From the IMG/VR virus record IMGVR_UViG_3300044633_003049, positions 124,001-188,000 of that record: a stretch of DNA of 64,000 nt, one strand, 5' to 3'. The notes under the pieces are model-generated. The model was not told the DNA's origin and did not search any database. It saw only the letters and a program-made list of their open reading frames with translations. Numbering within the stretch: the stretch's first letter is position 1; each line of letters starts with the position of its first letter. Made by a program: the position numbers and the translations under genes. Below, one piece after another: positions 10,397 to 62,750 of this stretch.

Positions 10397-11899
10397 TTAG
10401 AAATCAATTTTTACCGACACAATTTGAGCACCAACTCTTGGTATTGGTGATGCCAATTTACCCATAACCAATGTTTCTTTATTATTATTCAATAAAGCAA
10501 CTTCGGTCATCGTTGGATTTCCAGTGGTATATGTTGGGTTTTGAGACTTATCAAAAACTCCATTGGGTAAATTCAAATCAAAACTCATTTCTTCAACATC
10601 ACTTGCCCTAACTAAATTAACCGTTCCAAATGTCGTTCCACTTGTATTTGGGAAAGTTGTTAATGATGAAGTATATTGTGTTCCGCTCGCAATTTTAGTT
10701 TGATTTAACGTAAATGTATATCCTGTTTTTAAATCATTTATAGAATTCAATTCACTTGTTAAATTAATTATATTCCATGAAGTATGACTTGGGGTATTTC
10801 CTGTGGTGAATTGATAAAGTACATTAAATTGATTTCCGGTATATCCATTATTTAAATAATTAAAACTATTACCACTAAATTGAACGGTAACAACTTCGTT
10901 ATTTGACGACCCCGTTACTTTCATAAAATAATTACATGGTAATTTAGTGGTGTCTAAGGTATATGTAATCCAAAGAGTTTGTCCAGTTGTTAAACTTGTA
11001 ATTGGATCACTATTAGATACTAATGTATTAACAAATGGTGCAGGTAACGTATAAGTTCTACTTGAAGCTTGGTCTAACGCTACCACAATTTCTTCATCGT
11101 CAATAACTATTAATTTATGATTTTGAAATATTTTACCAACTACATTCGCAGTATTACCTGTTGAGTCTACTAAATCCATATAGTCGATTGTTAATCTACT
11201 ATTTAAATTTGAAACTATAGTTTTTGAACTACCAGTTGTCATGTAAAATGTTGTTCCCGTACTTCTATGGTATTTTAAATCGGGTATTGTTACACTAAAA
11301 TATTGTTTGTCGGTTTTTGTATTTGGTGATGTAACACCTGTATATGTACTAATATAGTCATCATATTTAAAGAAACTATTAACATCAGTACCACCACTAT
11401 AATGTAAAATTGCAATTGCTTTTTGTTCTTCTGGAGATATTACAACTTGATTACCAATTGTATTAGTAATTGTTGTTCCTGTATTTGATGTTTGTCCCGA
11501 AGATGATGAATAACCAAAAAATGATTTTATTCCCAAATATTTACTATTTGAAAAATTTGTAAATCCAGTAGTTGCGTAGCCAATTGGATTTTTTTCCCAA
11601 ACAACATTTGATGTCCATCCAGTGTCTGTCATAACATTTCTACAAACTGATGTTATTTGATTACTTATTGGAACACCAAAAAATGTACTACCACTTGTAT
11701 ACCAAAAAGGGTATTTTACATTTATATCTTTATCAAATGGTTCCAACGTAGTTTGTGTACTTGGTCCACTGTAGTTATATTCTGAATCACCAACTGCAAA
11801 ATAACTAACATTAAAATTACCAGATGCAATTGCATTTCTACCTTTTTGTGTTAATCTTGCGGCCACTGTTGCCGAATATGTTGGGTTTAAAAAGCTCAT
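10397..11899 (-). CDS. Virion structural protein (baseplate/fibre attachment type)
   Basis: N-terminal RLTQKGR...YFAVGD and C-terminal TEVALLN...GKLASPI...VKIDF resemble the two ends of a tail-fibre base domain. S/T/G-rich middle. Confidence 0.65.
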   Translation of the reverse strand: MSFLNPTYSATVAARLTQKGRNAIASGNFNVSYFAVGDSEYNYSGPSTQTTLEPFDKDINVKYPFWYTSGSTFFGVPISNQITSVCRNVMTDTGWTSNVVWEKNPIGYATTGFTNFSNSKYLGIKSFFGYSSSSGQTSNTGTTITNTIGNQVVISPEEQKAIAILHYSGGTDVNSFFKYDDYISTYTGVTSPNTKTDKQYFSVTIPDLKYHRSTGTTFYMTTGSSKTIVSNLNSRLTIDYMDLVDSTGNTANVVGKIFQNHKLIVIDDEEIVVALDQASSRTYTLPAPFVNTLVSNSDPITSLTTGQTLWITYTLDTTKLPCNYFMKVTGSSNNEVVTVQFSGNSFNYLNNGYTGNQFNVLYQFTTGNTPSHTSWNIINLTSELNSINDLKTGYTFTLNQTKIASGTQYTSSLTTFPNTSGTTFGTVNLVRASDVEEMSFDLNLPNGVFDKSQNPTYTTGNPTMTEVALLNNNKETLVMGKLASPIPRVGAQIVSVKIDF

Positions 11900-11927
11900 A
11901 TATTATAAATATTATTTTTTTATTTTA

Positions 11928-14900
11928 TTAACATTGTGGTATGTGGTAATTAAATACTCCCGAATTTAACTCCCAACTTGTATTAGACGAATCGATAAAA
12001 CAACTAGTTGTTATAGGATTACCAATGCTATTTCTAGCTATAGCGGTACAAGTTGTTGAAGAACCTCCACCTAAACCATTAAATAAATTACCATTTGCAA
12101 CAAATAAATTATAATCTACACTATCGAGGAATATCCTCATAATTGTACCATTTGTACATCCATCTGAATCACATGTCGTGCCAATGTCGGCCAAATTATT
12201 TGTCAAACCGTTTGATGTTGGTGTTGGTGTTGGTGTCGGTGTATTAGTTGATGTATTTGTAGGTGTATTTGTAGGTGTATTAGTAGGTGTATTAGTTGGT
12301 GTAACCGTATTAGTTGGTGTGTTAGTTGGTGTTTTAGTAGGTGTAGGAGTATTGGTAGGTGTTTTGGTAGGTGTAGGGGTATTGGTAGGTGTTTTAGTAG
12401 GTGTTATAGTTGGGGTAGGTGTATTAGTTGGAGTATGTGTAGGTCTAGGTGTTTGTGGTATAGGATTTGAACAGTTATATTGATCATCATTGTAATCAAT
12501 ACCAACTGGATTTGTTAAACCATATCTTGGTTTTTGATATTTATATTTACATCTATTGAATATTGTATTAGAAATTAAATTTCCACCTGTCCATAATGTT
12601 GTCGCTGGTACAAATTGTTCAACCACTTTTACCCAATATGGACTCATTTTATTTATATATTCATTTATCGAAATGAAATCATATGGTGTAAATCCTGTGT
12701 TAGTGTTGGTAATGTAACTATTAAATACTTCCGTTAAACCAGTATATGATTTATCGTATTTTGATGTATTTGAATTTATCACCAATGTGTTTAATATGTT
12801 TTCAATATATTCATTAAATGTTACACCTGTTTGTGGTGTTAAACCTCCAAAGGATAATTCTAAATTTCTTGATTGTCTATAAACGTCATATTCAATTCCT
12901 TGTGATGGTGATAAATGGACACTAATATTTTTTCTATTTAAAACAAGTTGTTGGTCATTTACATTAACTTTTTTATTATCAATTTTTGATGTTAAATCAA
13001 ACCCATAATCTAATCCAGGTAAAGTTCTAAATGTGTCAAAATAATCTTCACCATATGTGTATGGTTTTGACATTGTTTTAATATATTTTGTTCGACCTGT
13101 TAATTGAAAAACTCCGTTTACAAATGACCCGCTTGATAAATTTGTATCAATTATATCTGACGACCTATGGTCAAGTGTTGTATCGTACCAACCAGAACCT
13201 TTTCCAAAAAATATATCACTTTGGGTATTTGTTGTTTTTCTAGGTAATCCATTTTCATCAATTGGATATTCATCTCTACTTAATGTTGATGAACTTATTG
13301 TTAATCCAGTTAGATATGTGTATCCCGATGTTGTATCCGTAAGTCCTGAACTATTTACGTACATAGTATATTCAAACCCACTACCTATTGTATATCCAGT
13401 AACTACTGTATCAACTTTTGTTCCTTGGATTACGTCGTATAAATCGGTTTCTAAATTAGGGTTGTTTGGTAATTTTGTTACATTATAAACAAACTCATTA
13501 ATTTTAATTATTGGTTCGGGAGCTCCGATAAACTTTAAAAAGAATTCCAAAGACGCTCGTGTTCCTTTTGATTTATATATGTAAGCAAGATTAACTAATA
13601 ATCTTCTATAAAATTCATATTCAGCTTCCACTAAAGTTTTACCTAATGATATACCATTAAACACAGTATCTTGTCTTAAGTATAAAGTATCCTCTAATGA
13701 TTTTTCATCAAATAAATTAATGGTTGATAATCCTAATGTTTGTGAAAGATTCTTCAATAAAATATCAGGAAAATTATTTATTCCATCATAACTTACATTA
13801 CGCATGTAAGCAATATTATCAATATATTTTTTTACTCTATCGAATGATTGACCATATAATTGAAAGATGGATTGTGCCTTTTGGTCGTCAGTATCAAATT
13901 CAAATAATTGTGGTGCTGTTAAAAATCTTACAATTAAGTTAGATTTATAATCATCTATCTCATCACCTAAACTACTTAATTGACTAATATAATCAGCATA
14001 ATCAATACCGACTATTTGTAAATTCCAACCATCTTTCGTTGTTGGCCAATTAACATATACATTAACAATTTCAGTTTTAGTTTCATCAAAACTATCTTTC
14101 GGTACCTTAAAACTTGCTTGATATTTTGGGTTAGTTTCTCTATTTAATAAAAGAGTTTCTAATTCGTCTAACCCACTAAAAAATTCTTCGGTAATTCCAT
14201 TATTTGGCCTTATTAAAACATTTTCAGTAAATCCTGTTAACCCATTAAATGGATTTCCTTTAACTTTTAATTTAATTAAATTAGAACTATCAGGTTCGGT
14301 ATATGAAACAATATCATATGTTAAACCACTATATTCACTATTATCTAAACGTTGTATGGTGTATTTTGTATATGATGAATAAAAATTTCTAATTGTATTA
14401 TCCACATTAGGTAAAGTATTACTTAATGGTTTAATAAGTGTAATATCAAAAGGATTAAATAAAATTGATTTTTGAATGTAAAATTCAGTTGTCTTTGCAT
14501 TTTCACTATAAGTTATTCCCGATAATGTTACGTCAATACTTTTAATGGGACTATCTTTATCAACTAATATAGCTGCAGGAAAGTTTGTGATAATATTTGA
14601 TATAGATACTTGTAATCTTTGTTTTAATGAACCGTATAAAGATTTTCCGGCATCGTTAATCCCACCTTTAAATTTAATTTTTTCTTTTTTCTTTACACTA
14701 CCATTTTGTGTTGTTTCACCACTTAACTCTTCTTTTAAATCTTTTAATGTTAAGAAATCGGAAAATGGTTGTGATTTAAAATTTTTGCTATCTTTTTCAG
14801 GAATGACTCTATTAATATCAAAGTTCGTATTAGTCAGTTGACTAGTACCATCTGTAATCTGTGTACCAACTAATTTATCGCTAAACGTTTCTACACCACT

Positions 14901-14939
14901 AGCAGCTTCACTTGGAACTTTATATCTTACTTTAGCCAT
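11928..14939 (-). CDS. Baseplate wedge protein (P2 gpI/T4 gp7-like segment) with C-terminal Pro/Thr stalk
   Basis: YRRLLVNLAYIYKSKGTRASLEFFLKFIG segment, TPTN repeats, and a Cys-containing terminal domain. Confidence 0.65.
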   Translation of the reverse strand: MAKVRYKVPSEAASGVETFSDKLVGTQITDGTSQLTNTNFDINRVIPEKDSKNFKSQPFSDFLTLKDLKEELSGETTQNGSVKKKEKIKFKGGINDAGKSLYGSLKQRLQVSISNIITNFPAAILVDKDSPIKSIDVTLSGITYSENAKTTEFYIQKSILFNPFDITLIKPLSNTLPNVDNTIRNFYSSYTKYTIQRLDNSEYSGLTYDIVSYTEPDSSNLIKLKVKGNPFNGLTGFTENVLIRPNNGITEEFFSGLDELETLLLNRETNPKYQASFKVPKDSFDETKTEIVNVYVNWPTTKDGWNLQIVGIDYADYISQLSSLGDEIDDYKSNLIVRFLTAPQLFEFDTDDQKAQSIFQLYGQSFDRVKKYIDNIAYMRNVSYDGINNFPDILLKNLSQTLGLSTINLFDEKSLEDTLYLRQDTVFNGISLGKTLVEAEYEFYRRLLVNLAYIYKSKGTRASLEFFLKFIGAPEPIIKINEFVYNVTKLPNNPNLETDLYDVIQGTKVDTVVTGYTIGSGFEYTMYVNSSGLTDTTSGYTYLTGLTISSSTLSRDEYPIDENGLPRKTTNTQSDIFFGKGSGWYDTTLDHRSSDIIDTNLSSGSFVNGVFQLTGRTKYIKTMSKPYTYGEDYFDTFRTLPGLDYGFDLTSKIDNKKVNVNDQQLVLNRKNISVHLSPSQGIEYDVYRQSRNLELSFGGLTPQTGVTFNEYIENILNTLVINSNTSKYDKSYTGLTEVFNSYITNTNTGFTPYDFISINEYINKMSPYWVKVVEQFVPATTLWTGGNLISNTIFNRCKYKYQKPRYGLTNPVGIDYNDDQYNCSNPIPQTPRPTHTPTNTPTPTITPTKTPTNTPTPTKTPTNTPTPTKTPTNTPTNTVTPTNTPTNTPTNTPTNTSTNTPTPTPTPTSNGLTNNLADIGTTCDSDGCTNGTIMRIFLDSVDYNLFVANGNLFNGLGGGSSTTCTAIARNSIGNPITTSCFIDSSNTSWELNSGVFNYHIPQC
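12214..12460 (-). repeat. Coding low-complexity repeat encoding ([12 protein letters not shown])n
   Basis: Degenerate 12-nt periodicity (gtattagttggt-type units). Confidence 0.9.
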
Positions 14940-15872: not shown

Positions 15873-16436
15873 TTATTGTTTTCTAACTTTAAAATACCCA
15901 TTTCCATATATACTCAATTCACCCATACTATCAATTTCACTTAACCTGAAGTTCCTTTCCATAACTCCCAATTTACCTCGTTCCACAAAAATGTCCGAAT
16001 AAACGGTTGGTTGTTCCACAAACCCCAAGAAATGTTCGTTTCTTGTTAGGGTATAGTTAATCACTTCCTCCTTGGTAAACCCCGTAGTGCTACCTGTAAT
16101 CATGGTGTACCCATCAGAATAATCTCTATATTGTAAACTTGTGGAACCAGTTGTATTGTATGTATAATCAAATGTATAACCTGTCCAAGTTGTCCCTCCT
16201 GTTATTGATCCACTTGTTAATGTTTGTGTGTATCCTGTTGCTCCGTATTTTTTTAATTCGGATAACTTACTACCACCAATACCTAAATAGGTGAAACCTG
16301 TTGTGGTATAACCCGTTGCAGGGTTATATTCATAGTCATTTAAATAATCCGAACCACTATTTGGTGTTAGTGTGTCTGACGATATGTTCGTATATGGAAT
16401 TGTGAATCCAGTAAGTGTTCCAAAAAAAGTTGACAT
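15873..16436 (-). CDS. Putative virion protein (possible C-terminal half of a split gene)
   Basis: Nine TGxT motifs. Ends DIFVERGK...YGNGYFKVRKQ. Has its own TATTTAT motif. Confidence 0.6.
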   Translation of the reverse strand: MSTFFGTLTGFTIPYTNISSDTLTPNSGSDYLNDYEYNPATGYTTTGFTYLGIGGSKLSELKKYGATGYTQTLTSGSITGGTTWTGYTFDYTYNTTGSTSLQYRDYSDGYTMITGSTTGFTKEEVINYTLTRNEHFLGFVEQPTVYSDIFVERGKLGVMERNFRLSEIDSMGELSIYGNGYFKVRKQ

Positions 16437-16516: not shown

Positions 16517-17242
16517 TTAAACGGCCGCAGGAATATACCAATAATCAAAATCAACATAATTAGTTGTTGAGTTATGTGTTAACCTCATGGTTCCTTTTAT
16601 GGAAACAGGATCAGAATCTAATGATGTATTAGCACTACCCGTTAATGTAAACGTTTTACCTGATTTAGTGATAGAAAAACTACTAAATGGTCCGTATTGA
16701 TAATCGCCATAAACTGTGACTCCTCCCGATGTTCCACTCACATAAGATAATGTAAAACCTGTAGCATCTATATATGATAAAGTATCAAAAGTACCAACAA
16801 CGTAATTACCTACAATCTTTCCATTAGATTCCGAAAACCCATTGTATGTATAACCTGTACCTGTTTGATTAAAAGTATTAACTTGTGCTGTTGTAGGGTA
16901 ACCGTTATATATGTTGGTGAATGTTCCTGTATTTGGTTGATACACCGTTAATGCTGCCGTTGTAATGTCTTGTGTTGCAGTTGTACTACATGAGGTTGTA
17001 CTTGTTAATTTAACATAGTTATCTAAACCTGTTATACCTGAAATTCCATAACCATTAAGTAATGTGCCACCATTTACCGATGAAGTTGCGGTTTTAGTTA
17101 AACCTGTAACAATGGTTCTATCATAAACCGCAGCATCAGTTGCGACATCCCATCTATAGATTTCAACTGTAAAATTATTTGGTACTGATGATGTTCCTGT
17201 TAATTGTACACTAACTTGAGAACTTGGTAAAAATACTGGCAT
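16517..17242 (-). CDS. Thr/Ser/Gly-rich beta protein (appendage component)
   Basis: 241 aa with extracellular-type composition. TATTTAT upstream. Confidence 0.55.
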   Translation of the reverse strand: MPVFLPSSQVSVQLTGTSSVPNNFTVEIYRWDVATDAAVYDRTIVTGLTKTATSSVNGGTLLNGYGISGITGLDNYVKLTSTTSCSTTATQDITTAALTVYQPNTGTFTNIYNGYPTTAQVNTFNQTGTGYTYNGFSESNGKIVGNYVVGTFDTLSYIDATGFTLSYVSGTSGGVTVYGDYQYGPFSSFSITKSGKTFTLTGSANTSLDSDPVSIKGTMRLTHNSTTNYVDFDYWYIPAAV

Positions 17243-17277
17243 TTTTTAAATTTTTATTTCTTTTATAATAAATATCC

Positions 17278-20200
17278 TTAATCTATAATTTGAGTAATAT
17301 TTCGTTTATTTGTTCCCGCAGTTGAATCGTCATATTGTAATTGGAATACACCACCAGAAGACGGTGAAGTTTTATTGACATTGAAAGTATAATTTGCTCC
17401 ACTAGGTAATGCCCAATAACCTGAATATGTCGTTTGGTTAGGACCGGTGATATTCACTGAAATACTATATGAGGATGCCGCTCCTGATGGATCTAACACT
17501 CCATATCCAGATAACGTTCCTGAACTGGCGAATGTTGAATTACCATATAACCATATATATTTAGTTGCACCACTAGTATTTGTTACTGTAATTGTCGCGG
17601 TACCATTACTTGTTACCGGGTATGTACCGGATACAACGGTATATGCGAATTGTGATGCACATATGATTTCACTATGTGATGAATATGTAACACATCCATT
17701 TGCGTCTGTCACTCTTAAGTAATAATAACCACAACCTAATGAAGCATATCCCTCTGATGGTGACGATCCTGGTACGTTAAGTGTATTAACAATTAAAGTA
17801 TCATTTGCATAATCGTAATCAGTGTAAGAAGTTGCGGTGGTGTCTTTATATAATGTATAAGTTTTAGGGAAAACTCCACCTGTTGAGGTTACTTGAAGTG
17901 ATCCGTTTCCTGGTACCGTTTCATTAACTACCGATGTTATTGTTGCAGTTTGTACTGTTGGTTGTGTTATTGTTTGTGAATATGAATGTACACAACCTAA
18001 ACTATCTTTAACATAAACTGAATGTGCTGCAGCAGTTAATGAATTAAATGTTTTATCTAACGCAAAATATGTAACATTATCTATTGAAGTGCTGTATCCA
18101 GTTCCTGACCCACCTGACCCACCTGTTACCGCTATTGAACCATTTGAACCACCATTACAACTTACATTTGTAATTGTAAATGTCGCATTTGGTGCGGTTT
18201 TTGCTAAGTTACCAACTGAAACTGAAGCTACAGTTCCAACTCTATTATTATTTCTAGCATAACCAGTGTATGTGCCTCCAGCTAAACTACTAAATGTTCC
18301 ACTAGCTTGCCAATTATCATTATCTCTTGAATACTCATATGGTGCACCATTACCACCACTTGCGGTTAATGTAAATGCGGCAGTACTATCATCATAACAT
18401 GTTTGAACCGTTGAACTGCTACTTACCGTTAATGCCGGTAGTGATGGTGTAGGAGTTGGTGTTCCTGTAGGAGTATTAGTTGGTGTCGCTGTGTTAGTTG
18501 GGGTATTAGTTGGAGTATTAGTTGGAGTATTGGTCGGAGTATTTGTTGGTGTTGGTGTATTGGTCGGAGTATTAGTTGGTGTATTAGTTGGTGTGTTAGT
18601 AGGTGTTACCGTATTTGTTGGTGTGTTAGTAGGTGTGTTAGTAGGTGTGTTAGTAGGTGTGTTGGTTGGAGTTACTGTATTAGTTGGGGTAGGTGTTGGG
18701 GTTGGTCCTAACACAACAATACTAATACCGAATGAACAGTTTACTGTTGGTGTTGGGGTATTAGTTGGTGTAGGGGTATTGGTCGATGTAGGTGTGTTAG
18801 TTGGGGTATTAGTTGGCGTATTTGTCGGTGTGTTAGTAGGGGTTGGTGTGTTAGTAGGTGTGTTAGTAGGAGTATTAGTTGGTGTATTAGTATTAGTCGG
18901 AGTATTAGTTGGTGTGTTGGTTGGCGTTGCAGTATTAGTCGCAGTTGGGGTTGGGGTTGGTCCTAACACAACAATGCTAATACCAAATGAACAGTTTACA
19001 GTTGGTGTTGGTGTATTGGTTGGTGTAGGTGTGTTGGTCGGAGTATTAGTTGGTGTTACAGTATTAGTCGGAGTATTAGTTGGTGTGTTGGTAGGTGTAT
19101 TAGTAGGTGTTACCGTATTGGTCGGAGTATTAGTTGGGGTATTAGTTGGTGTTACCGTATTTGTTGTCGTAGGTGTTGGAGTTGGTGCTAACACAACAAT
19201 GCTAATACCAAATGAACAGTTTACAGTTGGTGTTGGAGTATTAGTTGGAGTTACAGTTGGGGTAACCGTATTAGTTGGTGTATTAGTAGGGGTTGGTGTA
19301 TTGGTAGGTGTTGGAGTTGGACTTAATATTGCAACACTAACACCGAATGAACAGTTTACTGTTGGAGTTGGTGTATTGGTTGGAGTTATAGTTGGTGTAA
19401 CCGTATTAGTTGGTGTTGGAGTTGGTGTTGGTACGACATAACAAACTCCTGTTTCTAAAATTCTAATATTTGCGGGTGGATAATACGTTTCAGTATCTAC
19501 AACAGGAACTAATGATTGATATTGAATTGGGTCTGTAATTTCATATATAGCCTCAGAGACATAAATAACTTCAGTTATAAAACCATTATTAATCGTATTA
19601 AATCTATTGTATTGTACATAACCATATGAATCGACAATATATGTTGTTCCCGTATAATATTCACAAGCAGTCACACCCGTACTTTGTGTAAATCCACTTT
19701 GAATAAAAGTTATTTTATCAAACGGGTTTTCAGATTCATAATCTGTTATGTTGTATGACGTTAGTGTACCTCCTGTTTGAGGGATATTTAAATATAAAAA
19801 CTGATTCGTTTCATTTGGACCAATTGTTATTTTTTCAGATGTAAGTAAACTCGTTGACCCTGTAAAAATATTAACATTAAAAGTAACACCAACGTATGAT
19901 GGTACAGTGTTACCACTAATATCGGTTAAATAAAAATTTATACCATTATCATCATTATCAAGGTCACTAATTTCTTCTGCATTAATTAAAATCGTAAAAG
20001 GATTACGATATGTAAATTTACCACTACTAAATGGAAAAATCTCTCTATAAATTGAATCCGAGGCCTCGGTATATCCTGTTCCGGTTAAATTATTATTGTA
20101 AAGAAAAAAACTTGTAGGTTCAGTTCTATTATCCACAAAACCTCTACTGACTGTTGCACCAGTAGTTGCTCCTGTGTAAAATGTATTTGTATTCCAATTT

Positions 20201-23200
20201 GTAATTAATCCGTCAATATTATTTTCTAAACTTAAAGTTAATAAACTATAATCATATGAGTCTATATACCATGCACTTGTATGATCAAGATTTGTTGTTG
20301 ATATGTTATGGGTACCAGTTGTTGCCGATGTTACTGTCGCATCATTACTATTTTGCCATATTAAAACATCGGTTACAACACCATTTACCATTTTGTATAT
20401 GGTTCTGAATGGACTCGTTCCAACTAAAGAATAATAACCATTTAATGCTGTTGAGTCACCATGAACGTCATAATATAATTTCTTACCAATAGTAATACCT
20501 AATCCATTTGAATTATCATAATTTATTACCGTTAAATTTGGTAAGTTTTCAGATTTTATTTCATGTGTGAAATTTAATTCTATGTCAGTAACGCCGGGTT
20601 TTTCTTCATAAGAATATAATGTATCAATTGTGTTTCCTGATAGTGAAGAAAGATATGCTGCCGCTTGATTATCGGCATCATTTTGTGAAACTGTTGATGT
20701 TATAAATCCTTCAGGTATAGTATATATAATCGGTAATGGATTATTTAATTCCCCAACTATTGAACTACCTTGAGTGTACGTTATTGTTAATGAATTACTT
20801 GAGTATGTGGTTGGGGTTGTTGTATATTTAACAGGATATCCCGCAGTGTAAGATAGAAACCACAATTTAAGTGTTTCTGTGATATAATTTGTTTTAGACG
20901 TATCTATAACATTTAGTGAATATTCATTTATGGAATTTTTAGTTGTATATGATAATGTTTTTGTTGTTGGTTTTCCGTCACTTGAATTAGACGGAATATT
21001 ATAAAAATACGCTCCATCATTATATATACCTCTATCCCATGAAGATAAATCGTCTTTTTTATAAATTGTTGATCCGGTTGTTATGTATGGTGTTGTTGCG
21101 TATCTACTGAAAAAATAACTAAATTTTTCTTTAAAATCTTTTGTCTGTGCTGTTAAAGCCAAAATTAAAAAAAACGCTAAAGCCGCAACTGCAATAACTA
21201 AACCAACAATTGGTACAAATACAGATGCTCCGGCACTTGCTATTGATCCACCACCGCTTATTAAAGCCGAAGTTTTTATTATACTTGCCGTAAACCCATA
21301 AACAAATCCCGCAGATAAAACAGATCCACCTAAAGCCGCATAAACCCCTGCGTCATCTTCTAATAATTTAAATAATTCGGGAACTCCAGAACCTAAAATG
21401 TATCCTTTATTAAGTTTTATCACCATATGTTGTACACCTGTAATACCGGAAGAAGTTTCATTCGCAAAATTCCACGCATTGAAAAATGGATTATTAGCGT
21501 TAGTTTCCGTATAACCCGAAGTGTACCCTAAATGATATTTGTAAACCGATGGTTGTAGATAATCTGATGTTGATAAAATTTTATTAACTAAACCAACACC
21601 AGTCATTGACGGTTCAACACCTGTTGGTACTAATAATTCATTTGCTATTAATGTTTCATCGCCTCTATTCTTAAGATTTGTAAAATCTTTTGGTCCTGTA
21701 ACCACGTCTGACGTTTTTCTTGGTCCAAATAATTTTTTAGTTACTTTATAGTCGGTATGTGTACCGAATTCTCTTTTTAATATATTTCCAACTTGATATA
21801 CTTTATTTGTGGGTGACGTTCTAACATTATCACCGTAAAAATACGGTAAAGCAAGTGATGTTAATAAACTATCATTATAAACATTAGTTCCTTTTATAGT
21901 GTAATTATTTGTTGATCCACTCCAATTTGAAATTGATACATTTGACCATAATTTAGTTACCGCTATTGGATTGTTATATGAGTCATATGGTGAATAAGGG
22001 TGAACTCCCATATCATATCCGTAAATCTCGTCTCCACATCCGACAGTAATTGATGTTGTAATTGATGCTCCGTTATATGATTTATTTTGTCCGACGGCAA
22101 TTCTAACTCTAACTTGTCCACTATTAGTTACAACATATATTGTTTTAGTTTTTGATGTTTTAGGAATTTTAATTGATGTTACATCGATAAAACCTATAAA
22201 ATATGGTTGTTGTCTACTATATGATTCGGTATAACTTACCTTTCCGGTAGTGTTGTTATTTACGCCATCACCAATTGAAAAACAAACGTCATCAGCGGTA
22301 CCTGTGTATGTAACCGTTACTGGAACAATTCTGTAACTAGATTCTAAAGTAAAAATAGTATCTTGTACTGAATATTTTAATCCGTTGCTTGCTAATGGAT
22401 TTACAATTGGAATATATTGATGTGTGTATGTATATCCACTAATATAATGTGTTTGTGAACTATTACCACAACCTAATGAAGCTCCAATACAACTTGACTG
22501 AAATACAAAAGAATGTGTAGATGGATTATATGTGTATATTGATCTTTTTTCAATATCTCCAGAAGCATAAGAATATGTTACACCTGAAGGTGCTTCAATT
22601 GTTAATCCATTATCCAAATACCAAGGTCCTGTCGTGAAAGGTGAGAAATTACTAAATCCGGAATTAATATCCAAAATACCATTTATTGGTGGTAAATTTG
22701 GTGTTTTAGCCCTATATAATGTTACAACTGTTGGACATGTTGTACAATAATAACTTGGGCTTGTAAATCCAGTACAAAATTCAGCACTTATTATTACAGG
22801 GTCACAATCAATTTCACAATACATTTGTCCACTCGTTCCACCTGATGTAATGATATCTAAAGTTAGTGAAATGTCATCATTTTTATTTTCATCAAAATAA
22901 AGTGTAATATATTTTGAAGTCTCAGTAGATAGTGTATTTAAATTTTCAACATCTACTAACGTATAAACACCGTTTATTTTTTGATTAATATTAATAGTAA
23001 TATTTGAACCGTTATTTGAACCTGGTGTGAATGTAAATTTAAATAACTTTTTGACTTTTGGTTTTATGAAAACATAAACCGGAATTTTGTTATTTAATTG
23101 ATTATAATTGAAGAAATAACTTTGTATGTTTGATTTAGTTCCAGCATTAGACCATGTTAAAGTTTTTTGAACTCCACAATCGTTTGTTGATGATGTGACG

Positions 23201-23247
23201 TCACTTTCTAAACAATCAATACTAAATGTACCTCCGGTTATACTCAT
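17278..23247 (-). CDS. Giant adhesin-like virion protein: hydrophobic hairpin, DUF5977-like motif, mucin-like Pro/Thr stalk, SprB-like repeats
   Basis: About 65-aa G/A-rich hydrophobic segment; [19 protein letters not shown]; over 300 aa of TPTN repeats; [12 protein letters not shown]...VKDSLGC and VTDANGC. Confidence 0.7.
18440..19440 (-). repeat. Coding repeat: (TPTN)n tracts punctuated by four VNCSFG(I/V)S(I/V)xxL modules
   Basis: The sequence aatgaacagtttac recurs near 18731, 18986, 19211 and 19347 within 12-nt-periodic DNA. Confidence 0.9.
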
Positions 23248-23249
23248 TT

Positions 23250-23546: not shown

Positions 23547-23547
23547 G

Positions 23548-27139: not shown

Positions 27140-27177
27140 AACTATTGATTAACTAATAAATATATTAGTTTTTGGTT

Positions 27178-58109: not shown

Positions 58110-58124
58110 ATACTAATAAATAGA

Positions 58125-58286
58125 TTAATTAGGATTTTCTAACTCTAATAAGAAGTTAATATAATATCTTCTAACATATATGGGCATAGATAGGATATCG
58201 CCATATGTAAACCCCTTTTTAATGAGGTATAAAATCTCGTCTAATTGATTTTTTTTATATTCCGTAGAAAGGTCGAAAAAACTCAA
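58125..58286 (-). CDS. Tail-assembly chaperone second ORF (gp51/gpT-like), no ATG start (not in the ORF track)
   Basis: +1 frame relative to 58255..59004: ...FDLSTEYKKNQLDEILYLIKKGFTYGDILSMPIYVRRYYINFLLELENPN*. Only TTG codons lie upstream in frame. Confidence 0.7.
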   Translation of the reverse strand: MSFFDLSTEYKKNQLDEILYLIKKGFTYGDILSMPIYVRRYYINFLLELENPN

Positions 58287-59004
58287 CCCCAAATCCAATG
58301 TCAATTTGGACTATATCTCCTGATGGGGTGGTTACTGTTTGGGTTAAATCTAACCCTGGTTTATTATCTTTGATAAATTTTCTAAATTCTTGTGAATCTT
58401 TAATCGGCATATTCTCAACAAAGTTCCTAATGTTCATTTGGTCTTTGTTACCTGCAACCGTTTTAATCATAAATTCAAGTTGTTTTGTAACAATTGGAGC
58501 CACCCCATTACCATTCCAACTTTCCTTTATATCTTCAATTTCCTTTTCTTGTTTTTGAGTTAAAAACTTGAAGGTGATATCTATTTTACTCTTTTCCATG
58601 TAATATTGATATTCACCATTACTATCTTCTTTCAAGTTAAAATCCTTCATCTTTAATTCAGATAAATCAATTTCAACCGTAAATTGTTCTTGTGTCTTTG
58701 AGTCAGTTGTGGTTAAGTTATATATTGAACCAAAACCTGTATTTCTTAAAAATATAAGAATGGCTTGTCTATCTTCATCCACAATATCATCTACTTGTAA
58801 ATCTTTATCCAAAACCTTTCTTCTTAAAAGTTCATTGATAACACCGTTATTCGCAATTAAGTTTGGAGCAGAAAGAATATTTTCATCTGCAGCAGTTAAA
58901 TAAGCAACTCTTACTGATTTCTTTTTACTTGGGTAATGTATACCTCTACTTGGTAGTTCTACTACGTCGTATGCAATTGTTGGGTCTATTTTATATTCGT
59001 CCAT
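58255..59004 (-). CDS. Tail/baseplate assembly chaperone (T4 gp26-like)
   Basis: VELPSRG, LTAADENIL, DRQAILIFLR, PGLDL, ending FGVEFFRP. Between the tube and tape-measure genes. Confidence 0.8.
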   Translation of the reverse strand: MDEYKIDPTIAYDVVELPSRGIHYPSKKKSVRVAYLTAADENILSAPNLIANNGVINELLRRKVLDKDLQVDDIVDEDRQAILIFLRNTGFGSIYNLTTTDSKTQEQFTVEIDLSELKMKDFNLKEDSNGEYQYYMEKSKIDITFKFLTQKQEKEIEDIKESWNGNGVAPIVTKQLEFMIKTVAGNKDQMNIRNFVENMPIKDSQEFRKFIKDNKPGLDLTQTVTTPSGDIVQIDIGFGVEFFRPFYGI

Positions 59005-59105: not shown

Positions 59106-59594
59106 TTAATAAACTTGGATACAACGGTCCATTCTTAATGAAGCGTCAATTGTTGCCAAATCATCTCTTGAGTAATCTAAATCACCGAAGTTCAAACTTG
59201 TTAAGAAACAACCTTGTAAAATCCATTTTTCAACCACAACTCCCGTTGGGTCTAACATCTCCAATTCAATGTCTTTCTTATAACCCGCAGCATATCCCAT
59301 ACGACCTGTAACTGACTCCGCATGTAAACGGAACCATTCCATAAGTGCTTGAGAAGCAGAAGGACCAATTGGGTCTTTAAATTGAACTTTAATCTCTTCC
59401 CACTCAAATTGACCAGCAACATAAGTTTTTGTGTTCAAGAAAGGAATCTCAACTGATTTAATTTTAGCAGATGGTCTCGCTGTGGAGAATACATACCACT
59501 CATTTATTCCTAAAGATGATGGAAATCTTAGGATAAATCTATTTTTTCTTTTCGGTTCGTAAGGAACCGGCATTTTCATTAATAAATCTGCCAT
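59106..59594 (-). CDS. Tail tube protein (T4 gp19-like)
   Basis: EPKRKNRF, WEEI...DPI, YKKDI...LDPTG...W.LQGCF...FGDLDY. Follows the sheath gene. Confidence 0.9.
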   Translation of the reverse strand: MADLLMKMPVPYEPKRKNRFILRFPSSLGINEWYVFSTARPSAKIKSVEIPFLNTKTYVAGQFEWEEIKVQFKDPIGPSASQALMEWFRLHAESVTGRMGYAAGYKKDIELEMLDPTGVVVEKWILQGCFLTSLNFGDLDYSRDDLATIDASLRMDRCIQVY

Positions 59595-59862: not shown

Positions 59863-59864
59863 TT

Positions 59865-59895: not shown

Positions 59896-59918
59896 ATTTT
59901 TATATATCTCCTTTTAGA

Positions 59919-62750
59919 TTAGATATTGTCAAATGAAGCTCCTGTTGGAGTGATTACAAATTCCAAATCAATGAATTCTAAAGAACGAGTTGGTTTGATA
60001 TAAATCTTACCTCTTAATGTGTTAGCATCGATGTCCTCTGGATCATTAGATACACTCACACGGAAGTCATACAAACCTCTTTCTTTCTTAATTGATTCCA
60101 AGATAGGATTTACTAATCTTAAGAACTCTTGTCTTACTTGGTCGTCATTTTGTTCAAACAATAACCTTACAGCTACCGCAGAAATCAATTTTCTAGCTCT
60201 TAATAATAATCTTCTTACGTTGATTCTATCTAAAGCCGACTCTCTAACTTGTAACGTTTTATTACCCCATATAATGGTACCTGTATCAGAGAATGTTGCA
60301 ATTGGGTTGATTCTCGCCTTATATAACTCATCTCTTTCGTCAAGAGTAAGTTTCTTTTGTGCTTTGATTGCGTTTACCAAACCTCTACTGTAACCCGCAA
60401 CTGCGAACCAAGGATAAGATACGTTGTCAGTTAAGGCGATGTTCTTAACAACCTCACCTGTTGGTGGAATATATAATTGAGTTGCATTATCCGTGTCTCT
60501 TACTTGAATCCAAGGCCAATATGTGGCTGAATAGTTTGAGTCAACTGCGATACCGTCTAAATCGTCAATAACGTTAGATGCAATAGTTTCATTTGGTGCT
60601 CCAATTATATAAATTGAATCCGCTCTATCAGTTTCAATCATGTCAATTGCTTGAGTTGTTAATGAACTATGGTCGTAGAAGTTAATACCTGGAGTTGCAA
60701 ATACGTTAATATCTACGGCCTCAGGATTTGCATATGTTTGAATACCTTCTAAATAAGCATAATAATCAGAGTTTCCATTTGCAGTGTCAAACAATCCACC
60801 ATTTGTTGTAAGACCTGAAATATATGTTAATTTTCCAAATATATAACCGTCACCATATGTTCTTACTTGTCTGTAAATGTCCCAACCATCAAAACCACCA
60901 CATACGGCAAATGTAAATTTACGGAAGTTAATACTATCTAATTTACCTTTATCGGTACCTTCTAAATCATAAGGTGTTGTTTGGTACATTAATCCTGAAA
61001 CTGTATTTCCAGTTATTGTAGCTGCGTTTATAGATAAGTGAAATCCGTCTGTTGATCCTTTTTGAGTTGCTTCTGTTGAACATTTATATTTAAACAAATC
61101 GGAGTCAAAATTAAAATTACCATCAGAAGATAAACCTAAAGATGTTTTTCTAAATTTATCACCATTACTTGTTATGTCATCATAAATTGTTTCACCAGAA
61201 TCAAAAAATTCAGTTTTATAAAGAACACTACCTAATGTTGTTGAACCTGATAAAGTTGCATTTGTAAAACCTTTAAATCCTGCAGGAAATGCATTTGATG
61301 GTGCGTTAGAGTCCATAAGTAACATAATGTATTTAGAATTCAAAGTATACTCACCAGTTGATGTACCTATTTTTCTAGCAACATATCCTGCAACGTCTGG
61401 ATTCATTGAACATCTTGAGAATTTTTCCAAAACAACCATGTTTTCATCGGAATCATTAAAATCTCTAACTAATATATCAAATTCACCTGTTTCAATATTA
61501 ATATTTTGAATTGTGATTTTAATTTCCTGATTTGCGGCGTTTCCGTCAGAAATTGTAATAACATCAAATAAATCATCAACTTTACCACCACGAACTTCAG
61601 AAACCACAGTAGGTGACTTTGGTGTGTCCCAAGTATTTGAGAAGTTGTCACCTTCCGCATTATATACTTCAGTTAGGCTTAAACCTCTAATTAAACCTTG
61701 ATTATATAAGTTTTTTGTTAAGTTCGGATAAACTTCGTGAACATATAATGGAACATCGTTACCATCTTTATCATATGGACTTGTTCCTAAAACTTTAGTT
61801 ATGTATTTTGTTGACGTTGAATCTAAACTACACGTGAAAACCTTAGCACCTGTAGTTCCTGTAACATAAATATTAAATTCCGATAATGGGTCACTTGTTA
61901 ACGTTGCCCCACTAATAGTAAAAGATGTGTTTCCAGTAACTTGAAAATTTAAAGATTCTTGTGAATAATTTCCTCTTGATCTTAATGCCGCCATAACAAT
62001 TTCCTTATCATATACTGAAGTTGCGGTATATGTATATTTTGTTGTGGTAAAATTCATTGAACTAGCAGCATAAACAAATAAGTAACTATACACTTCGGTA
62101 CCGTTAGTATTGGTAAACACGTTATTCCAATTTTTTATAGTTGCGGTTCCAATAGGACTTGTTTTTTGATTTCCCGTTAAACCTGATGTTGCTGATGATG
62201 GAACATTTCCAATTGTAAACCAATCACCTGTAGATAAACCGCTACCGTAATTAGTGACTATATAATTTGTAACCGTTGTACCAGTTGAATTGGTTTTACC
62301 AGATAATGAACTATAAAAAGTACTATATGTTGGGTTTACAATGTCCTCAGCTGTTGGTGTTGTAATACCTGTAGTTGAACTTGGAGTTTGTGTTAAGTCA
62401 ACAGATATACCACCTATTGTTTTAATGCCGAATGTTTTTCCTGCTTTGTAACCTGTCTTACCTAATACTCTTGTTACAAATAATTGATTTGACTCTTGTA
62501 AATAAGATTTAGCGACATAACCTAATTCATATTTTGGATTGCCAGCACCATCTTTTTCAGGTGAGGTTGGTCCGAAGTATGTTTTAAATTCGTCAAAATT
62601 TGAAATTAATATTGGTTCAAAAGCGGGACCTTTTAAGGTTTCACCCACTAATCCCAATGTTGTAACACCTATACTTTGTGCTACGAATGTTAGATCTTTC
62701 TCTGATGTATAAACACCAGGAGACACGAAAACTCTGTTATTACTTGCCAT
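59919..62750 (-). CDS. Contractile tail sheath protein
   Basis: SPGVYTSEKD, GETLKGPAFEP, YWPW, PWFAVAGYSRG, INPI, WGNKTL, RINVRRLL, FEQND. Confidence 0.96.
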   Translation of the reverse strand: MASNNRVFVSPGVYTSEKDLTFVAQSIGVTTLGLVGETLKGPAFEPILISNFDEFKTYFGPTSPEKDGAGNPKYELGYVAKSYLQESNQLFVTRVLGKTGYKAGKTFGIKTIGGISVDLTQTPSSTTGITTPTAEDIVNPTYSTFYSSLSGKTNSTGTTVTNYIVTNYGSGLSTGDWFTIGNVPSSATSGLTGNQKTSPIGTATIKNWNNVFTNTNGTEVYSYLFVYAASSMNFTTTKYTYTATSVYDKEIVMAALRSRGNYSQESLNFQVTGNTSFTISGATLTSDPLSEFNIYVTGTTGAKVFTCSLDSTSTKYITKVLGTSPYDKDGNDVPLYVHEVYPNLTKNLYNQGLIRGLSLTEVYNAEGDNFSNTWDTPKSPTVVSEVRGGKVDDLFDVITISDGNAANQEIKITIQNINIETGEFDILVRDFNDSDENMVVLEKFSRCSMNPDVAGYVARKIGTSTGEYTLNSKYIMLLMDSNAPSNAFPAGFKGFTNATLSGSTTLGSVLYKTEFFDSGETIYDDITSNGDKFRKTSLGLSSDGNFNFDSDLFKYKCSTEATQKGSTDGFHLSINAATITGNTVSGLMYQTTPYDLEGTDKGKLDSINFRKFTFAVCGGFDGWDIYRQVRTYGDGYIFGKLTYISGLTTNGGLFDTANGNSDYYAYLEGIQTYANPEAVDINVFATPGINFYDHSSLTTQAIDMIETDRADSIYIIGAPNETIASNVIDDLDGIAVDSNYSATYWPWIQVRDTDNATQLYIPPTGEVVKNIALTDNVSYPWFAVAGYSRGLVNAIKAQKKLTLDERDELYKARINPIATFSDTGTIIWGNKTLQVRESALDRINVRRLLLRARKLISAVAVRLLFEQNDDQVRQEFLRLVNPILESIKKERGLYDFRVSVSNDPEDIDANTLRGKIYIKPTRSLEFIDLEFVITPTGASFDNI

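What the first reader, a model, noticed from the sequence alone, without database searches (positions are those of the whole stretch)
10397..62750. [S/T]-G-x-T motif saturates exposed virion proteins: candidate virion-wide glycosylation/modification sequon
Seen (hand counts from the translations): 14 of 16 SG/TG dipeptides in the 596-aa protein (28857..30647) have T at the fourth position. There are 13 motifs in the 500-aa protein (10397), 12 in the 1003-aa wedge protein, 9 within about 125 residues of the 187-aa protein, 7 in the 290-aa protein, and 11 in the sheath, where they lie in the variable middle and not in the conserved C-terminal core. Controls: none in NrdJ, SbcC, tape measure, tube or gp6/J, and only the Walker A TGKT in DnaB and RecA. 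The carriers have unrelated folds and the motifs are scattered and aperiodic, so one repeat fold does not explain them. Established: some phages, such as certain mycobacteriophages, glycosylate virion proteins with their own glycosyltransferases, and the Bacteroidota host O-glycosylation sequon is different (D-S/T-hydrophobic). Inference: this is a recognition sequon for a phage-encoded enzyme that coats the particle, for example as a glycan shield or adhesion layer. No such enzyme lies in this window.
Basis: partly seen in the sequence, partly recalled or inferred. Interest (0 to 1): 0.85.

Follow-up and report, generated by a model that had tools for sequence, protein, structure and literature searches.

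The report
Short threonine motif saturating phage tails
A four-residue pattern (Ser/Thr-Gly-any-Thr) is packed into the outer tail and baseplate proteins of an abundant group of giant freshwater phages that also carry many sugar-adding enzymes, so it may be an address label for coating the virus with sugars, though this is not yet proven.

Summary
Ten unrelated virion proteins in the window hold 101 [ST]GxT motifs against 18 expected. After [ST]Gx the next residue is Thr in 115 of 233 cases, against 12 of 158 in other proteins. The signal is at protein level (normal codon usage), directional (the reverse is 1.5x), and chemically specific (NGxT, DGxT, [ST]GxS/V/I are not enriched). It occurs in every relative examined, sits in variable outer modules and never in conserved cores, and is absent from three other myoviruses. 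Carrier families share no detectable homology.

The window holds no enzyme, but the same genome has a conserved trio of soluble glycosyltransferases and a roughly 45-kb sugar/modification island. The island includes a TibC-like protein O-glycosyltransferase that keeps the catalytic and iron-finger residues. That enzyme is paired with Ser/Thr-rich collagen-like fibre genes, so it probably serves those fibres rather than the motif.

No outgroup contrast or chemical evidence links any enzyme to [ST]GxT. Several sites are old and position-conserved, so a lineage-specific structural turn remains a serious rival.

Confidence:
- modification sequon: about 0.42
- structural idiom: about 0.30

The parts
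28857..30647 (-). 596-aa baseplate-module protein with no Pfam or PHROG family: 14 motifs among 16 [ST]G
   Evidence: Its 73 distinct homologs carry 3-18 motifs. 15 sites hold the motif in at least 30% of them, and others are gained or lost by point substitution. In the confident AF2 region (160-300) the motifs lie in loops at strand ends.
10397..11899 (-). 500-aa protein: 13 motifs (1.3 expected)
   Evidence: The homolog in L020 has 19 of 31.
11928..14939 (-). 1003-aa peripheral baseplate or fibre protein: 12 motifs. Shares one domain (phrog_15511) with 17278..23247
   Evidence: Homologs hold 7-22 motifs and are still 14/23 in the low-motif lineage.
15873..16436 (-). 187-aa protein: 9 motifs in residues 9-121. 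The conserved C-terminal 60 residues are motif-free
   Evidence: I-T-G-x-T at 113-117 is invariant in 17 homologs. Other sites are replaced in L039/L048.
16517..17242 (-). 241-aa protein: 5 motifs (p = 0.006)
17278..23247 (-). 1989-aa protein: 20 motifs, mostly in residues 1000-1200, plus a (T-P-T-N)n linker at about residues 1270-1600
23548..24843 (-). 431-aa protein: 8 motifs (1.4 expected)
27178..28050 (-). 290-aa protein: 7 motifs, six of them in residues 22-88
28037..28855 (-). 272-aa protein: 2 motifs here, 0-10 in homologs, which gain variable C-terminal extensions
59919..62750 (-). Tail sheath (943 aa): 11 motifs, all in the variable inserted domains (residues 127-300 and 501-648)
   Evidence: The Mel-JY01 sheath (33% identical) has 0 of 7.
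45235..51078 (-). 1947-aa protein with a local cluster of 7 motifs in residues 937-1267 (8 in all)
30647..34027 (-). 1126-aa protein: 2 motifs here. Relatives carry up to 14, all in two variable regions, one of which is missing or shortened in this copy
34082..35914 (-). Negative control: gp6-like inner baseplate wedge (610 aa), 0 motifs here and 0-1 in every relative
59106..59594 (-). Negative control: tail tube (gp19-like), 0 motifs
24809..27139 (-). Negative control: collagen-like (G-[S/T]-S)n fibre protein. It has 81 [ST]G but only 6 motifs (6.0 expected)

Best explanation
[ST]-G-x-T is a short recognition element read by a trans-acting factor encoded by this phage lineage. The factor is most likely a soluble cytoplasmic glycosyltransferase that O-glycosylates one of the two hydroxyl residues while virion proteins fold and assemble.

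The element sits where a beta-strand ends (a hydrophobic or Thr residue at -1), turns at Gly, and starts the next strand at Thr, in the variable outward-facing modules of the sheath, peripheral baseplate and fibre-like proteins. Selection for many such sites has created them independently in unrelated proteins.

Which enzyme does this is inferred. The clade-core trio (406-aa phrog_7162 GT, 354-aa GT-B related to AmGGT/Agt, 259-aa GT2) is the best candidate for the conserved step. Strain-specific island enzymes (GT7-lectin fusions, methyl-, carbamoyl- and sulfate-related enzymes) would elaborate the glycan.

Shown: the motif statistics, its specificity, its distribution, and the existence and conservation of the enzymes. 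Inferred: the covalent modification, the acceptor residue, the enzyme-motif pairing, and the biological role (shielding, stability or adhesion).
For: 1. Enrichment is 5.6x in ten proteins, against 1.3-1.6x for reversed or permuted arrangements.
2. Chemical specificity: SGxT 5.9x and TGxT 5.5x, but NGxT 1.1x, DGxT 0.8x, [ST]GxS 1.4x, [ST]GxV 1.0x and [ST]GxI 0.4x. Neither a generic turn nor a beta-branched strand start explains it.
3. Codon usage inside the motif equals background, and both Ser codon families are used.
4. Carrier families are unrelated (phmmer; hhalign at most 1.1%), so the enrichment is convergent.
5. The motif is present in all relatives at 51-100% identity, with turnover by point substitution and arrival with variable modules. 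Conserved cores and inner parts stay at 0-1.
6. It is absent from structural modules of Mel-JY01, megaphage LR756508 and the T-rich Flavobacterium phage immuto.
7. The three positions are coupled: T at position 4 is kept in 88% of cells when positions 1 and 2 are intact, against 46% otherwise.
8. The same genome encodes a GT trio without TM segments, kept in the same order at 55-100% identity in all 78 loci found.
9. It also encodes a large sugar-nucleotide and GT island, partly conserved in about 24 related contigs.
10. It encodes a TibC-family protein O-glycosyltransferase module that keeps D110, T226, K230, W305 and four iron-finger Cys. That family recognises strand-loop-strand with the acceptor at the loop start (PMC3835316, PMC4358343). 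So protein glycosylation is plausible in this lineage.
11. In the confident part of the AF2 model the motifs lie in loops at strand ends.
Against: - There is no chemical evidence of modification.
- No enzyme is tied to the motif. The GT trio is universal in the clade, so there is no presence/absence contrast, and it could act on DNA or another target (its neighbours are dUTPase and PhoH).
- The TibC-like enzyme is operon-paired with collagen-like (G-[S/T]-S)n fibres in 49 of 78 loci. Those fibres and the enzyme's flanks are not motif-enriched.
- The GT7-lectin pair is strain-specific.
- About 15 sites in the 596-aa family are position-conserved. Gly is invariant at several, and distant homologs (90-350 bits) keep 3.7-4.5x enrichment, as expected of structural sites.
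- When position 1 is lost it is replaced mainly by D, G or N, the classic turn formers.
- Strict Thr with Ser disfavoured at position 4 is unusual if that residue only needs a hydroxyl.
- Exposure is not shown: AF2 mean pLDDT was 56 and 46.
Confidence: 0.42

Rival explanations
1. Lineage-specific structural idiom. [ST]-G-x-T is a compact turn or strand-initiation unit (a hydroxyl cap at position 1, left-handed Gly, Thr opening the next strand). It stabilises the Thr/Tyr/Asn-rich beta modules these phages use for their outer decorations. It is inherited at old sites and re-invented as new modules evolve, with no modification involved.
For: - Many sites are position-conserved, with invariant Gly.
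- Residual 3.7-4.5x enrichment persists in distant homologs of the 596-aa family.
- Replacements at position 1 are D, G and N.
- Flanking positions favour L/Y at -1 and F/Y at +1, as in strands.
- AF2 puts the motifs at loop-strand junctions.
- Tandem units with a period of 5-6 residues occur, for example residues 222-235 of the 596-aa protein.
Against: - A turn idiom should accept Asn or Asp at position 1 and Val or Ile at +3. NGxT, DGxT, [ST]GxV and [ST]GxI are not enriched, although NG and DG are as common as expected.
- The same folds manage without it: the Mel-JY01 sheath has 0 of 7, and low-motif relatives of the 596-aa protein have 3.
- T-rich proteins of another AT-rich phage and T-rich fibres of this genome lack it.
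- Convergence in at least five unrelated families within one lineage needs a lineage-wide cause.
Confidence: 0.3
2. Non-covalent recognition element. The motif is a docking or binding patch for a partner that is not an enzyme: an assembly chaperone, a decoration protein (for example the Laminin_G_3 lectin-like proteins), or host-surface polysaccharide (weak multivalent adhesion).
For: - The motif is confined to outer modules of adsorption-related proteins.
- Its sites are hydroxyl- and aromatic-rich, like carbohydrate-binding surfaces.
- Several Laminin_G_3 proteins are encoded near the fibre genes.
Against: - No partner was identified.
- A four-residue patch scattered aperiodically in unrelated folds is a poor binding site.
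- The motif is also abundant in sheath insertion domains that do not contact the host first.
Confidence: 0.1
3. Sequon for a modification other than glycosylation, such as phosphorylation, methylation-linked chemistry, sulfation or hydroxylation, carried out by other island enzymes.
For: The island holds an APS-kinase domain, a SET-domain protein, several 2OG-Fe(II) oxygenases and three radical-SAM proteins.
Against: - No Ser/Thr kinase was seen in the roughly 178 kb examined.
- SET and 2OG enzymes usually act on Lys, Pro or Asp, not Ser or Thr.
- Glycosyltransferases dominate the repertoire.
Confidence: 0.06
4. Composition, low-complexity or DNA-level artefact.
For: The carriers are rich in T, S and G, and the genome is 30% G+C.
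Against: - The enrichment survives shuffles and permutation and reverse controls.
- Codon usage inside the motif is background.
- G/S/T-rich collagen-like fibres and a T-rich Flavobacterium phage are not enriched.
- The motifs are aperiodic.
Confidence: 0.02

Closest known systems
Mycobacteriophage virion glycosylation (Freeman et al. 2023, Cell Host Microbe 31:1216; cited in PMC12619734; paper not held, details from that citation and my own knowledge)
   Same: Phage-encoded glycosyltransferases are proposed to modify virion proteins in the cytoplasm. A glycan coat would shield the particle.
   Different: In mycobacteriophages the glycans sit on C-terminal extensions of capsid and tail-tube subunits, and no short sequon is defined. 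Here the tube has no motif and the head proteins are unidentified. The candidate sites are internal loops of sheath, baseplate and fibre-like proteins, with a defined four-residue pattern. Nothing has been shown chemically.
Aah/TibC autotransporter heptosyltransferases (BAHT family; PMC4358343, PMC3835316)
   Same: - They are cytoplasmic O-glycosyltransferases that hyper-glycosylate Ser/Thr at the start of short loops between beta-strands.
- The phage genome encodes a module with E = 2e-58 to TibC that keeps the catalytic Asp, three of four sugar-binding residues and the four iron-finger Cys.
- The GT gene lies directly upstream of its likely substrate gene.
   Different: - The phage module is the C-terminal third of a 998-aa protein that also has GT4 and methyltransferase domains.
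- Arg-286 and the donor-selectivity Pro-300 are changed.
- The adjacent substrate candidate is a collagen-like (G-[S/T]-S)n fibre, not an autotransporter beta-helix.
- Aah has no sequence consensus, whereas [ST]GxT is a sharp one.
- There is no evidence that this enzyme reads [ST]GxT.
N-x-[S/T] sequon with cytoplasmic NGT/HMW1C plus the Agt extension enzyme (PMC12159676, PMC3012730)
   Same: A short acceptor-x-x-hydroxyl logic with Thr as a determinant. The modification is cytoplasmic and hits many sites on a large surface protein. The phage 354-aa GT is a distant relative (E = 4e-6) of AmGGT, whose Agt homologs extend glucose on glycopeptides.
   Different: The acceptor here would be Ser or Thr, not Asn. 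No GT41/HMW1C homolog was seen in the part of the genome examined.
Autonomous glycosylation in giant viruses: chlorovirus capsid protein with atypical sequons, and Mimivirus fibril and collagen glycosylation (PMC9614988, PMC4691112; specifics from my own knowledge)
   Same: The virus encodes its own sugar-nucleotide pathways and transferases. The sequons are non-canonical. Collagen-like proteins occur together with 2OG oxygenases and GTs.
   Different: Those are eukaryotic viruses.
Bacteroidota general O-glycosylation sequon D-[S/T]-[A/I/L/V/M/T] (my own knowledge)
   Same: A three-residue O-glycosylation sequon in the presumed host phylum.
   Different: - The pattern differs: there is no Asp before the hydroxyl, and Gly is required after it.
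- The host system is periplasmic, whereas virions assemble in the cytoplasm.

Membership tests
Enzyme-read protein O-glycosylation sequon | Motif over-represented in substrates beyond composition, with order and spacing specificity | tested here: met
   5.6x against 1.3-1.6x for permutations; Fisher 9e-20.
Enzyme-read protein O-glycosylation sequon | An obligatory hydroxyl acceptor that non-hydroxyl turn formers cannot replace | tested here: met
   SGxT 5.9x and TGxT 5.5x, against NGxT 1.1x and DGxT 0.8x.
Enzyme-read protein O-glycosylation sequon | Sites solvent-exposed on the assembled particle | tested here: inconclusive
   The motifs lie only in variable inserted modules of the sheath and of the 1126-aa family, and in loops in the confident AF2 segment. 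The models are poor (pLDDT 56 and 46) and give no accessibility data.
Enzyme-read protein O-glycosylation sequon | Cognate transferase co-distributed with the motif, with both absent together in outgroups | tested here: inconclusive
   The GT trio is present in all 78 clade loci. GT2 has no homolog in 50,697 cultured phage records, and three such phages lack the motif. No clade member lacking either feature was found, so there is no real contrast.
Enzyme-read protein O-glycosylation sequon | Covalent glycan demonstrated on the motif residue | not testable with these tools
   Needs mass spectrometry or glycan staining of virions or co-expressed proteins.
BAHT (TibC/Aah) protein O-heptosyltransferase: 998-aa protein L272:14252-17248, outside the window | Homology across the catalytic domain | tested here: met
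   E = 1.8e-58, 201 bits; query residues 655-997 against TibC 38-386 of 406.
BAHT (TibC/Aah) protein O-heptosyltransferase: 998-aa protein L272:14252-17248, outside the window | Catalytic base Asp-110 and the four iron-finger cysteines (339, 342, 358, 370) | tested here: met
   All are conserved in the HMMER alignment. The residue list is from PMC4358343.
BAHT (TibC/Aah) protein O-heptosyltransferase: 998-aa protein L272:14252-17248, outside the window | ADP-heptose-binding residues Thr-226, Lys-230, Arg-286 and Trp-305 | tested here: inconclusive
   T226, K230 and W305 are conserved. R286 is Val (with Lys at the preceding position), and the selectivity residue P300 is Gly. The donor sugar may differ.
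BAHT (TibC/Aah) protein O-heptosyltransferase: 998-aa protein L272:14252-17248, outside the window | Substrate is an autotransporter beta-helix encoded next to the enzyme | tested here: not met
   The adjacent gene is a collagen-like (G-[S/T]-S)n fibre with a Peptidase_S74 C-terminus, in 49 of 78 loci. The gene layout is the same but the substrate class differs.
Mycobacteriophage-type virion glycosylation | Glycans on C-terminal extensions of the major capsid and tail-tube subunits | tested here: not met
   The tube has 0 motifs and no extension. Head proteins were not identified.
Generic ST/Asx beta-turn followed by a strand | Asp or Asn equivalent to Ser or Thr at the capping position; any beta-branched residue favoured at the strand start | tested here: not met
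   NGxT 1.1x, DGxT 0.8x, [ST]GxV 0.96x and [ST]GxI 0.40x, although NG and DG are at expected frequency. However, D, G and N are the commonest replacements when a site is lost.
Glycosyltransferase family 2 (Pfam PF00535): 259-aa protein L060:11341-12120 | Score above the Pfam gathering threshold, and a DxD motif in the GT-A domain | tested here: met
   28.1 bits against 23.3. D-V-D at residue 111 and no TM segment. The acceptor is unknown.
Bacteroidota general O-glycosylation sequon | Asp immediately before the acceptor and a hydrophobic residue or Thr after it | tested here: not met
   Position -1 is L, Y, T or I, and the position after the hydroxyl is always Gly.

The most novel reading that the evidence does not exclude
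An abundant, uncultured lineage of 200-335-kb freshwater myoviruses uses a defined four-residue O-glycosylation sequon, [S/T]-G-x-T. A conserved set of soluble phage glycosyltransferases reads it and coats the outward-facing modules of the sheath, baseplate periphery and fibre-like proteins with glycans. A second, separate system (a TibC-like transferase plus a downstream (G-[S/T]-S)n collagen-like fibre) glycosylates the fibres. This would be the first sequence-defined protein glycosylation code in a bacteriophage. Sites could then be predicted from sequence alone across hundreds of metagenomic genomes.
Probability: 0.35. Interest if true: 0.88.

Novelty: new variant of a known kind. Interest (0 to 1): 0.72.

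Why it matters
Glycosylation of phage particles is known from only a few mycobacteriophages and has no sequence rule there. If this motif marks modification sites, glycan shielding, stability or adhesion in environmental phages could be predicted from sequence. It would also explain why these jumbo phages spend about 45 kb on sugar chemistry, and it would give glyco-engineering a compact cytoplasmic sequon-enzyme pair.

If the motif proves purely structural, it is still a useful case: a four-residue element convergently fixed in at least five unrelated protein families of one viral lineage.

The pairing of a TibC-family transferase with collagen-like fibres, seen in at least 49 viral contigs, is a testable enzyme-substrate prediction in its own right.

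Tried and rejected
- **DNA-level signal:** rejected. Motif codons follow background usage, and Ser uses both TCN and AGY codons.
- **Composition or low complexity:** rejected.
- **Avoidance of deamidation-prone NG/DG:** rejected. NG and DG are 1.17x and 1.14x expected.
- **A shared hidden domain:** rejected by phmmer and hhalign, apart from one known paralogous domain between 11928 and 17278.
- **GT7-lectin pair as the universal enzyme:** rejected. It is found only in this strain.
- **TibC-like enzyme as the motif reader:** not supported. Its flanks are not enriched, and it pairs with collagen-like fibres.
- **A motif-free clade member for contrast:** not found. Even 'low' lineages keep 14/23 in one protein.
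- **Outgroup search by alignment scan:** returned only the closest 80 of 405 matches. The representative search gave distant homologs but no genomic context.
- **Structure mapping:** both AF2 models were weak and Foldseek gave nothing.
- **Literature:** searches for the motif string and for glycosylated phage tail proteins found nothing relevant.
- **Identity with the published 'moraphages':** could not be verified.
- **Other dead ends:** an early BLAST run and one hhalign parse returned empty output and were redone. Contigs sharing only a DegT/epimerase cassette were unrelated viruses. The Phapecoctavirus context of the GT406 homolog was uninformative.

Full report
**What is in the window.** All large ORFs lie on the minus strand of a 30% G+C sequence.
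- PHROG and Pfam matches identify a tail sheath (59919..62750), a tube (59106..59594), a baseplate hub (58255..59004), a gp6-like wedge (34082..35914), a collagen-like fibre (24809..27139), NrdJ, DnaB, a RecA/UvsX-like protein, an exonuclease and gp32.
- Most proteins between 10.4 and 34 kb have no family at all.
- The window is 100% identical to part of a 211,784-bp IMG/VR contig. From the coordinates of L013 it corresponds to about positions 124,001-188,000.
- No close relative exists among 50,697 cultured phage records. The best sheath match is Microcystis phage Mel-JY01 at 33%.

**The observation.**
- Ten proteins (10397, 11928, 15873, 16517, 17278, 23548, 27178, 28037, 28857, 59919) hold 101 [ST]GxT motifs against 18.0 expected from their own composition. 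For the main carriers none of 2000 shuffles reached the observed value.
- Given an [ST]G dipeptide, the residue two positions after the Gly is Thr in 115 of 233 cases in carriers and 12 of 158 elsewhere. Fisher's test gives 9e-20, and the binomial against a 14.5% Thr frequency gives 3e-36.
- All remaining window proteins together have 12 motifs against about 10.8 expected.
- The DnaB and RecA sites are Walker A boxes. Sheath motifs lie only in residues 100-300 and 500-650.

**Specificity.**
- After a TPTN tandem repeat in the 1989-aa protein, TGxT and SGxT are the most over-represented a-b-x-c patterns.
- The signal is directional and register-specific: the reverse is 1.5x, [ST]xGT 1.6x, G[ST]xT 1.3x and [ST]GxxT 1.3x.
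- It is chemically specific at both ends. SGxT is 5.9x and TGxT 5.5x, but NGxT is 1.1x and DGxT 0.8x, although NG and DG dipeptides occur at expected rates. [ST]GxS is 1.4x, [ST]GxV 0.96x and [ST]GxI 0.40x.
- Codons within the motif follow background usage, with both Ser codon families used. The constraint is therefore on the protein.
- Flanks favour L/Y/T at -1 and F/Y at +1, and spacing is aperiodic.

**Are the carriers related?** phmmer finds one shared domain only, between 11928 and 17278. Profile-profile comparison of seven family alignments gives probabilities of at most 1.1%. The motif has therefore accumulated independently in unrelated families.

**Relatives.**
- The 596-aa protein has 50 related viral loci at 51-100% identity, and 405 matches with a profile.
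- Its homologs carry 3-18 motifs, with a median of 11 in 73 distinct sequences.
- Fifteen sites hold the motif in at least 30% of sequences. Others appear or vanish by point substitution, for example DYTT/TGST, VSFT/SGFT and TAHT/TGHT.
- At conserved sites position 1 is S 526, T 291, D 47, G 46, N 42. Position 2 is G 845 of 1095. Position 4 is T 795, S 119.
- The three positions are lost together: T4 is kept in 88% of cells when positions 1 and 2 are intact and in 46% otherwise. Some of this coupling reflects shared ancestry.
- Across loci, homologs of 11928, 15873, 28037, 28857 and 30647 are enriched nearly everywhere. The gp6-like wedge, the 302-aa protein, the 152-aa protein and NrdJ stay at 0-1.
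- In the 1126-aa family the motifs sit only in two variable regions, one of which is missing or shortened in the window's copy.
- Even the least enriched lineage keeps 14 of 23 in one protein.
- Distant homologs from the 50%-clustered library still show 3.7-4.5x enrichment, against 11.9x for close representatives. [DN]GxT stays at 2-8%.

**Controls in other phages.** ORFs in the structural modules of Mel-JY01 (5 of 105), megaphage LR756508 (5 of 54) and the T-rich Flavobacterium phage immuto (38 of 225, within expectation) are not enriched. Within this genome the G/S/T-rich collagen-like fibres are not enriched either.

**Structure.**
- AF2 on the 596-aa family gave mean pLDDT 56, with a confident segment at 160-300. 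There the motifs at 179, 222, 227, 232 and 262 lie in loops or short turns at strand ends.
- The 187-aa family gave pLDDT 46. In its better part the motifs again sit at loop-to-strand junctions.
- Foldseek found nothing. Exposure is thus inferred from domain variability, not shown.

**Enzymes.** I examined about 178 kb of the 212-kb genome by walking along the same contig.
- *Right of the window:* a motif-rich 713-aa virion protein (12 of 20), then a trio of transferases.
  - A 406-aa protein matching phrog_7162 'glycosyltransferase' at 9e-42.
  - A 354-aa protein related to the Actinobacillus glucosyltransferase AmGGT at 4e-6, whose Agt homologs extend glucose on glycopeptides (PMC12159676).
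  - A 259-aa GT2 above the Pfam threshold, with D-V-D at residue 111.
  - None has a hydrophobic segment. The trio is kept in the same order at 55-100% identity in all 78 loci found. The GT2 family has 1,756 metagenomic members, all unnamed, and no homolog in cultured phages.
- *Left of the window,* beyond further fibre genes, lies a modification island of about 45 kb. It contains:
  - a Methyltransf_24 protein
  - two beta4GalT-like catalytic domains fused to Laminin_G_3 (E = 8e-29 to beta4GalT7)
  - two twitch radical-SAM proteins and a third radical-SAM protein
  - DegT aminotransferases, five SDR epimerase/dehydratases and a UDP-glucose dehydrogenase
  - a carbamoyltransferase, an APS-kinase domain and a SET-domain protein
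  - several 2OG-Fe(II) oxygenases and another GT2
  - a 998-aa multidomain protein
- The GT7-lectin pair is strain-specific. About 24 other contigs share a sugar-nucleotide block in the same gene order.

**The TibC-like enzyme.**
- Residues 655-997 of the 998-aa protein match TibC (PDB 4rap) at E = 1.8e-58. TibC is the cytoplasmic autotransporter heptosyltransferase.
- Using the residue list in PMC4358343, the alignment keeps the catalytic Asp-110, Thr-226, Lys-230, Trp-305 and all four iron-finger cysteines. Arg-286 is Val and Pro-300 is Gly, so the donor sugar may differ.
[quoted passage not shown] This is the context in which [ST]GxT occurs.
- A profile scan finds at least 564 viral matches, including five contigs already assigned to this clade.
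- However, the flanks of these genes are not motif-enriched (506 observed against 620 expected).
- Instead, 49 of 78 loci have a collagen-like ORF on the same strand, in most listed cases starting 50-100 bp after the transferase stop. The control sets give 0 of 78, 0 of 42 and 12 of 101.
- Those fibres are (G-[S/T]-S)n repeats, and their non-collagen parts are not enriched (103 against 84.6).
- By the tibC-tibA and aah-aidA precedent (my own knowledge), this enzyme most likely glycosylates the fibres.

**Interpretation.**
- The convergent, lineage-restricted and chemically sharp enrichment argues for a lineage-wide trans-acting reader. Its confinement to variable outer modules points the same way.
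- The lineage's heavy investment in soluble transferases, including a family that is known to glycosylate proteins, makes O-glycosylation the most likely reading (0.42).
- The enzyme-motif link is entirely inferred. The conserved trio could act on DNA or another acceptor.
- The position-conserved sites, the residual enrichment in distant homologs and the D/G/N replacements keep a structural idiom alive (0.30).
- Non-covalent binding (0.10), another modification (0.06) and artefact (0.02) follow.

**Known relatives of the idea.** Phage virion glycosylation is established for mycobacteriophages (Freeman et al. 2023, cited in PMC12619734), but at C-terminal tails and without a sequon. PMC12619734 describes freshwater 'moraphages' of 200-307 kb with predicted Flavobacteriia hosts and four core glycosyltransferase orthogroups. 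They may be the same or a related lineage, but no shared accession could be found. No paper in the library mentions this motif.

Noticed in passing
L272:14252-17248 and L272:17315-19126 (same genome, left of the window); L279-L356: A TibC-family protein O-glycosyltransferase module (E = 2e-58, catalytic Asp and iron-finger Cys kept) lies directly upstream of a collagen-like (G-[S/T]-S)n fibre gene in 49 of 78 viral loci. At least 564 viral contigs encode such a module. This is a likely enzyme-substrate pair, analogous to tibC-tibA.
   Followed up: partly
L143, L199, L206, L207, L272 (same genome, about 30-95 kb of the 211,784-bp contig): A modification island of about 45 kb: five SDR epimerase/dehydratases, DegT aminotransferases, UDP-glucose dehydrogenase, carbamoyltransferase, an APS-kinase domain, a SET-domain protein, Methyltransf_24, three radical-SAM proteins (two twitch-type), and several GTs.
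   Followed up: partly
L143:12508-13959 and L143:13956-15374: Two tandem paralogs fuse a beta4GalT-like (GT7) catalytic domain (E = 8e-29 to beta4GalT7) to a Laminin_G_3 lectin-like domain. They have no match in cultured phages and occur only in this strain among viral contigs.
   Followed up: partly
window 18447-19437 (residues about 1270-1600 of the 1989-aa protein, minus strand); also residues 800-900 of 11928..14939: A mucin-like (T-P-T-N)n linker, interrupted by short V-N-C-S-F-G units, at 40-44% Thr. It explains the local G+C and skew bump and the spurious plus-strand ORF 18491..19441. It could itself be an O-glycosylation target.
   Followed up: no
L272:9524-12768: Four small tandem 2OG-Fe(II) oxygenase paralogs (158, 171, 184 and 165 aa; weak hits) flank a radical-SAM gene, a few kb from the collagen-like fibre gene. 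This is reminiscent of collagen hydroxylation and glycosylation in Mimivirus (my own knowledge).
   Followed up: no
window 16517-28050: In many relatives the 28037 homolog is followed directly by the 15873 homolog. This phage has about 11 kb inserted between them, with five fibre-like genes (290, 776, 431, 1989 and 241 aa). Four of the five are motif carriers.
   Followed up: partly
L060:894-3035 (minus strand; right of the window): A 713-aa 'virion structural protein' (phrog_8510) outside the window is another strong carrier (12 motifs among 20 [ST]G). It shares the phrog_15511 domain with 11928 and 17278.
   Followed up: partly
L060:12121-12819: A late-sigma-like protein (phrog_234; weak Sigma70_r2) lies immediately downstream of the GT354-GT2 pair in all clade loci. 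A second sigma-70-type gene lies left of the window (L051:11151-11966).
   Followed up: no
whole clade: The lineage is very abundant in metagenomes: 405 viral stretches match the 596-aa family, and 1,756 proteins match the GT2. Contigs reach 335 kb. It is possibly the same as or related to the 'moraphages' of PMC12619734, but this is unverified.
   Followed up: partly
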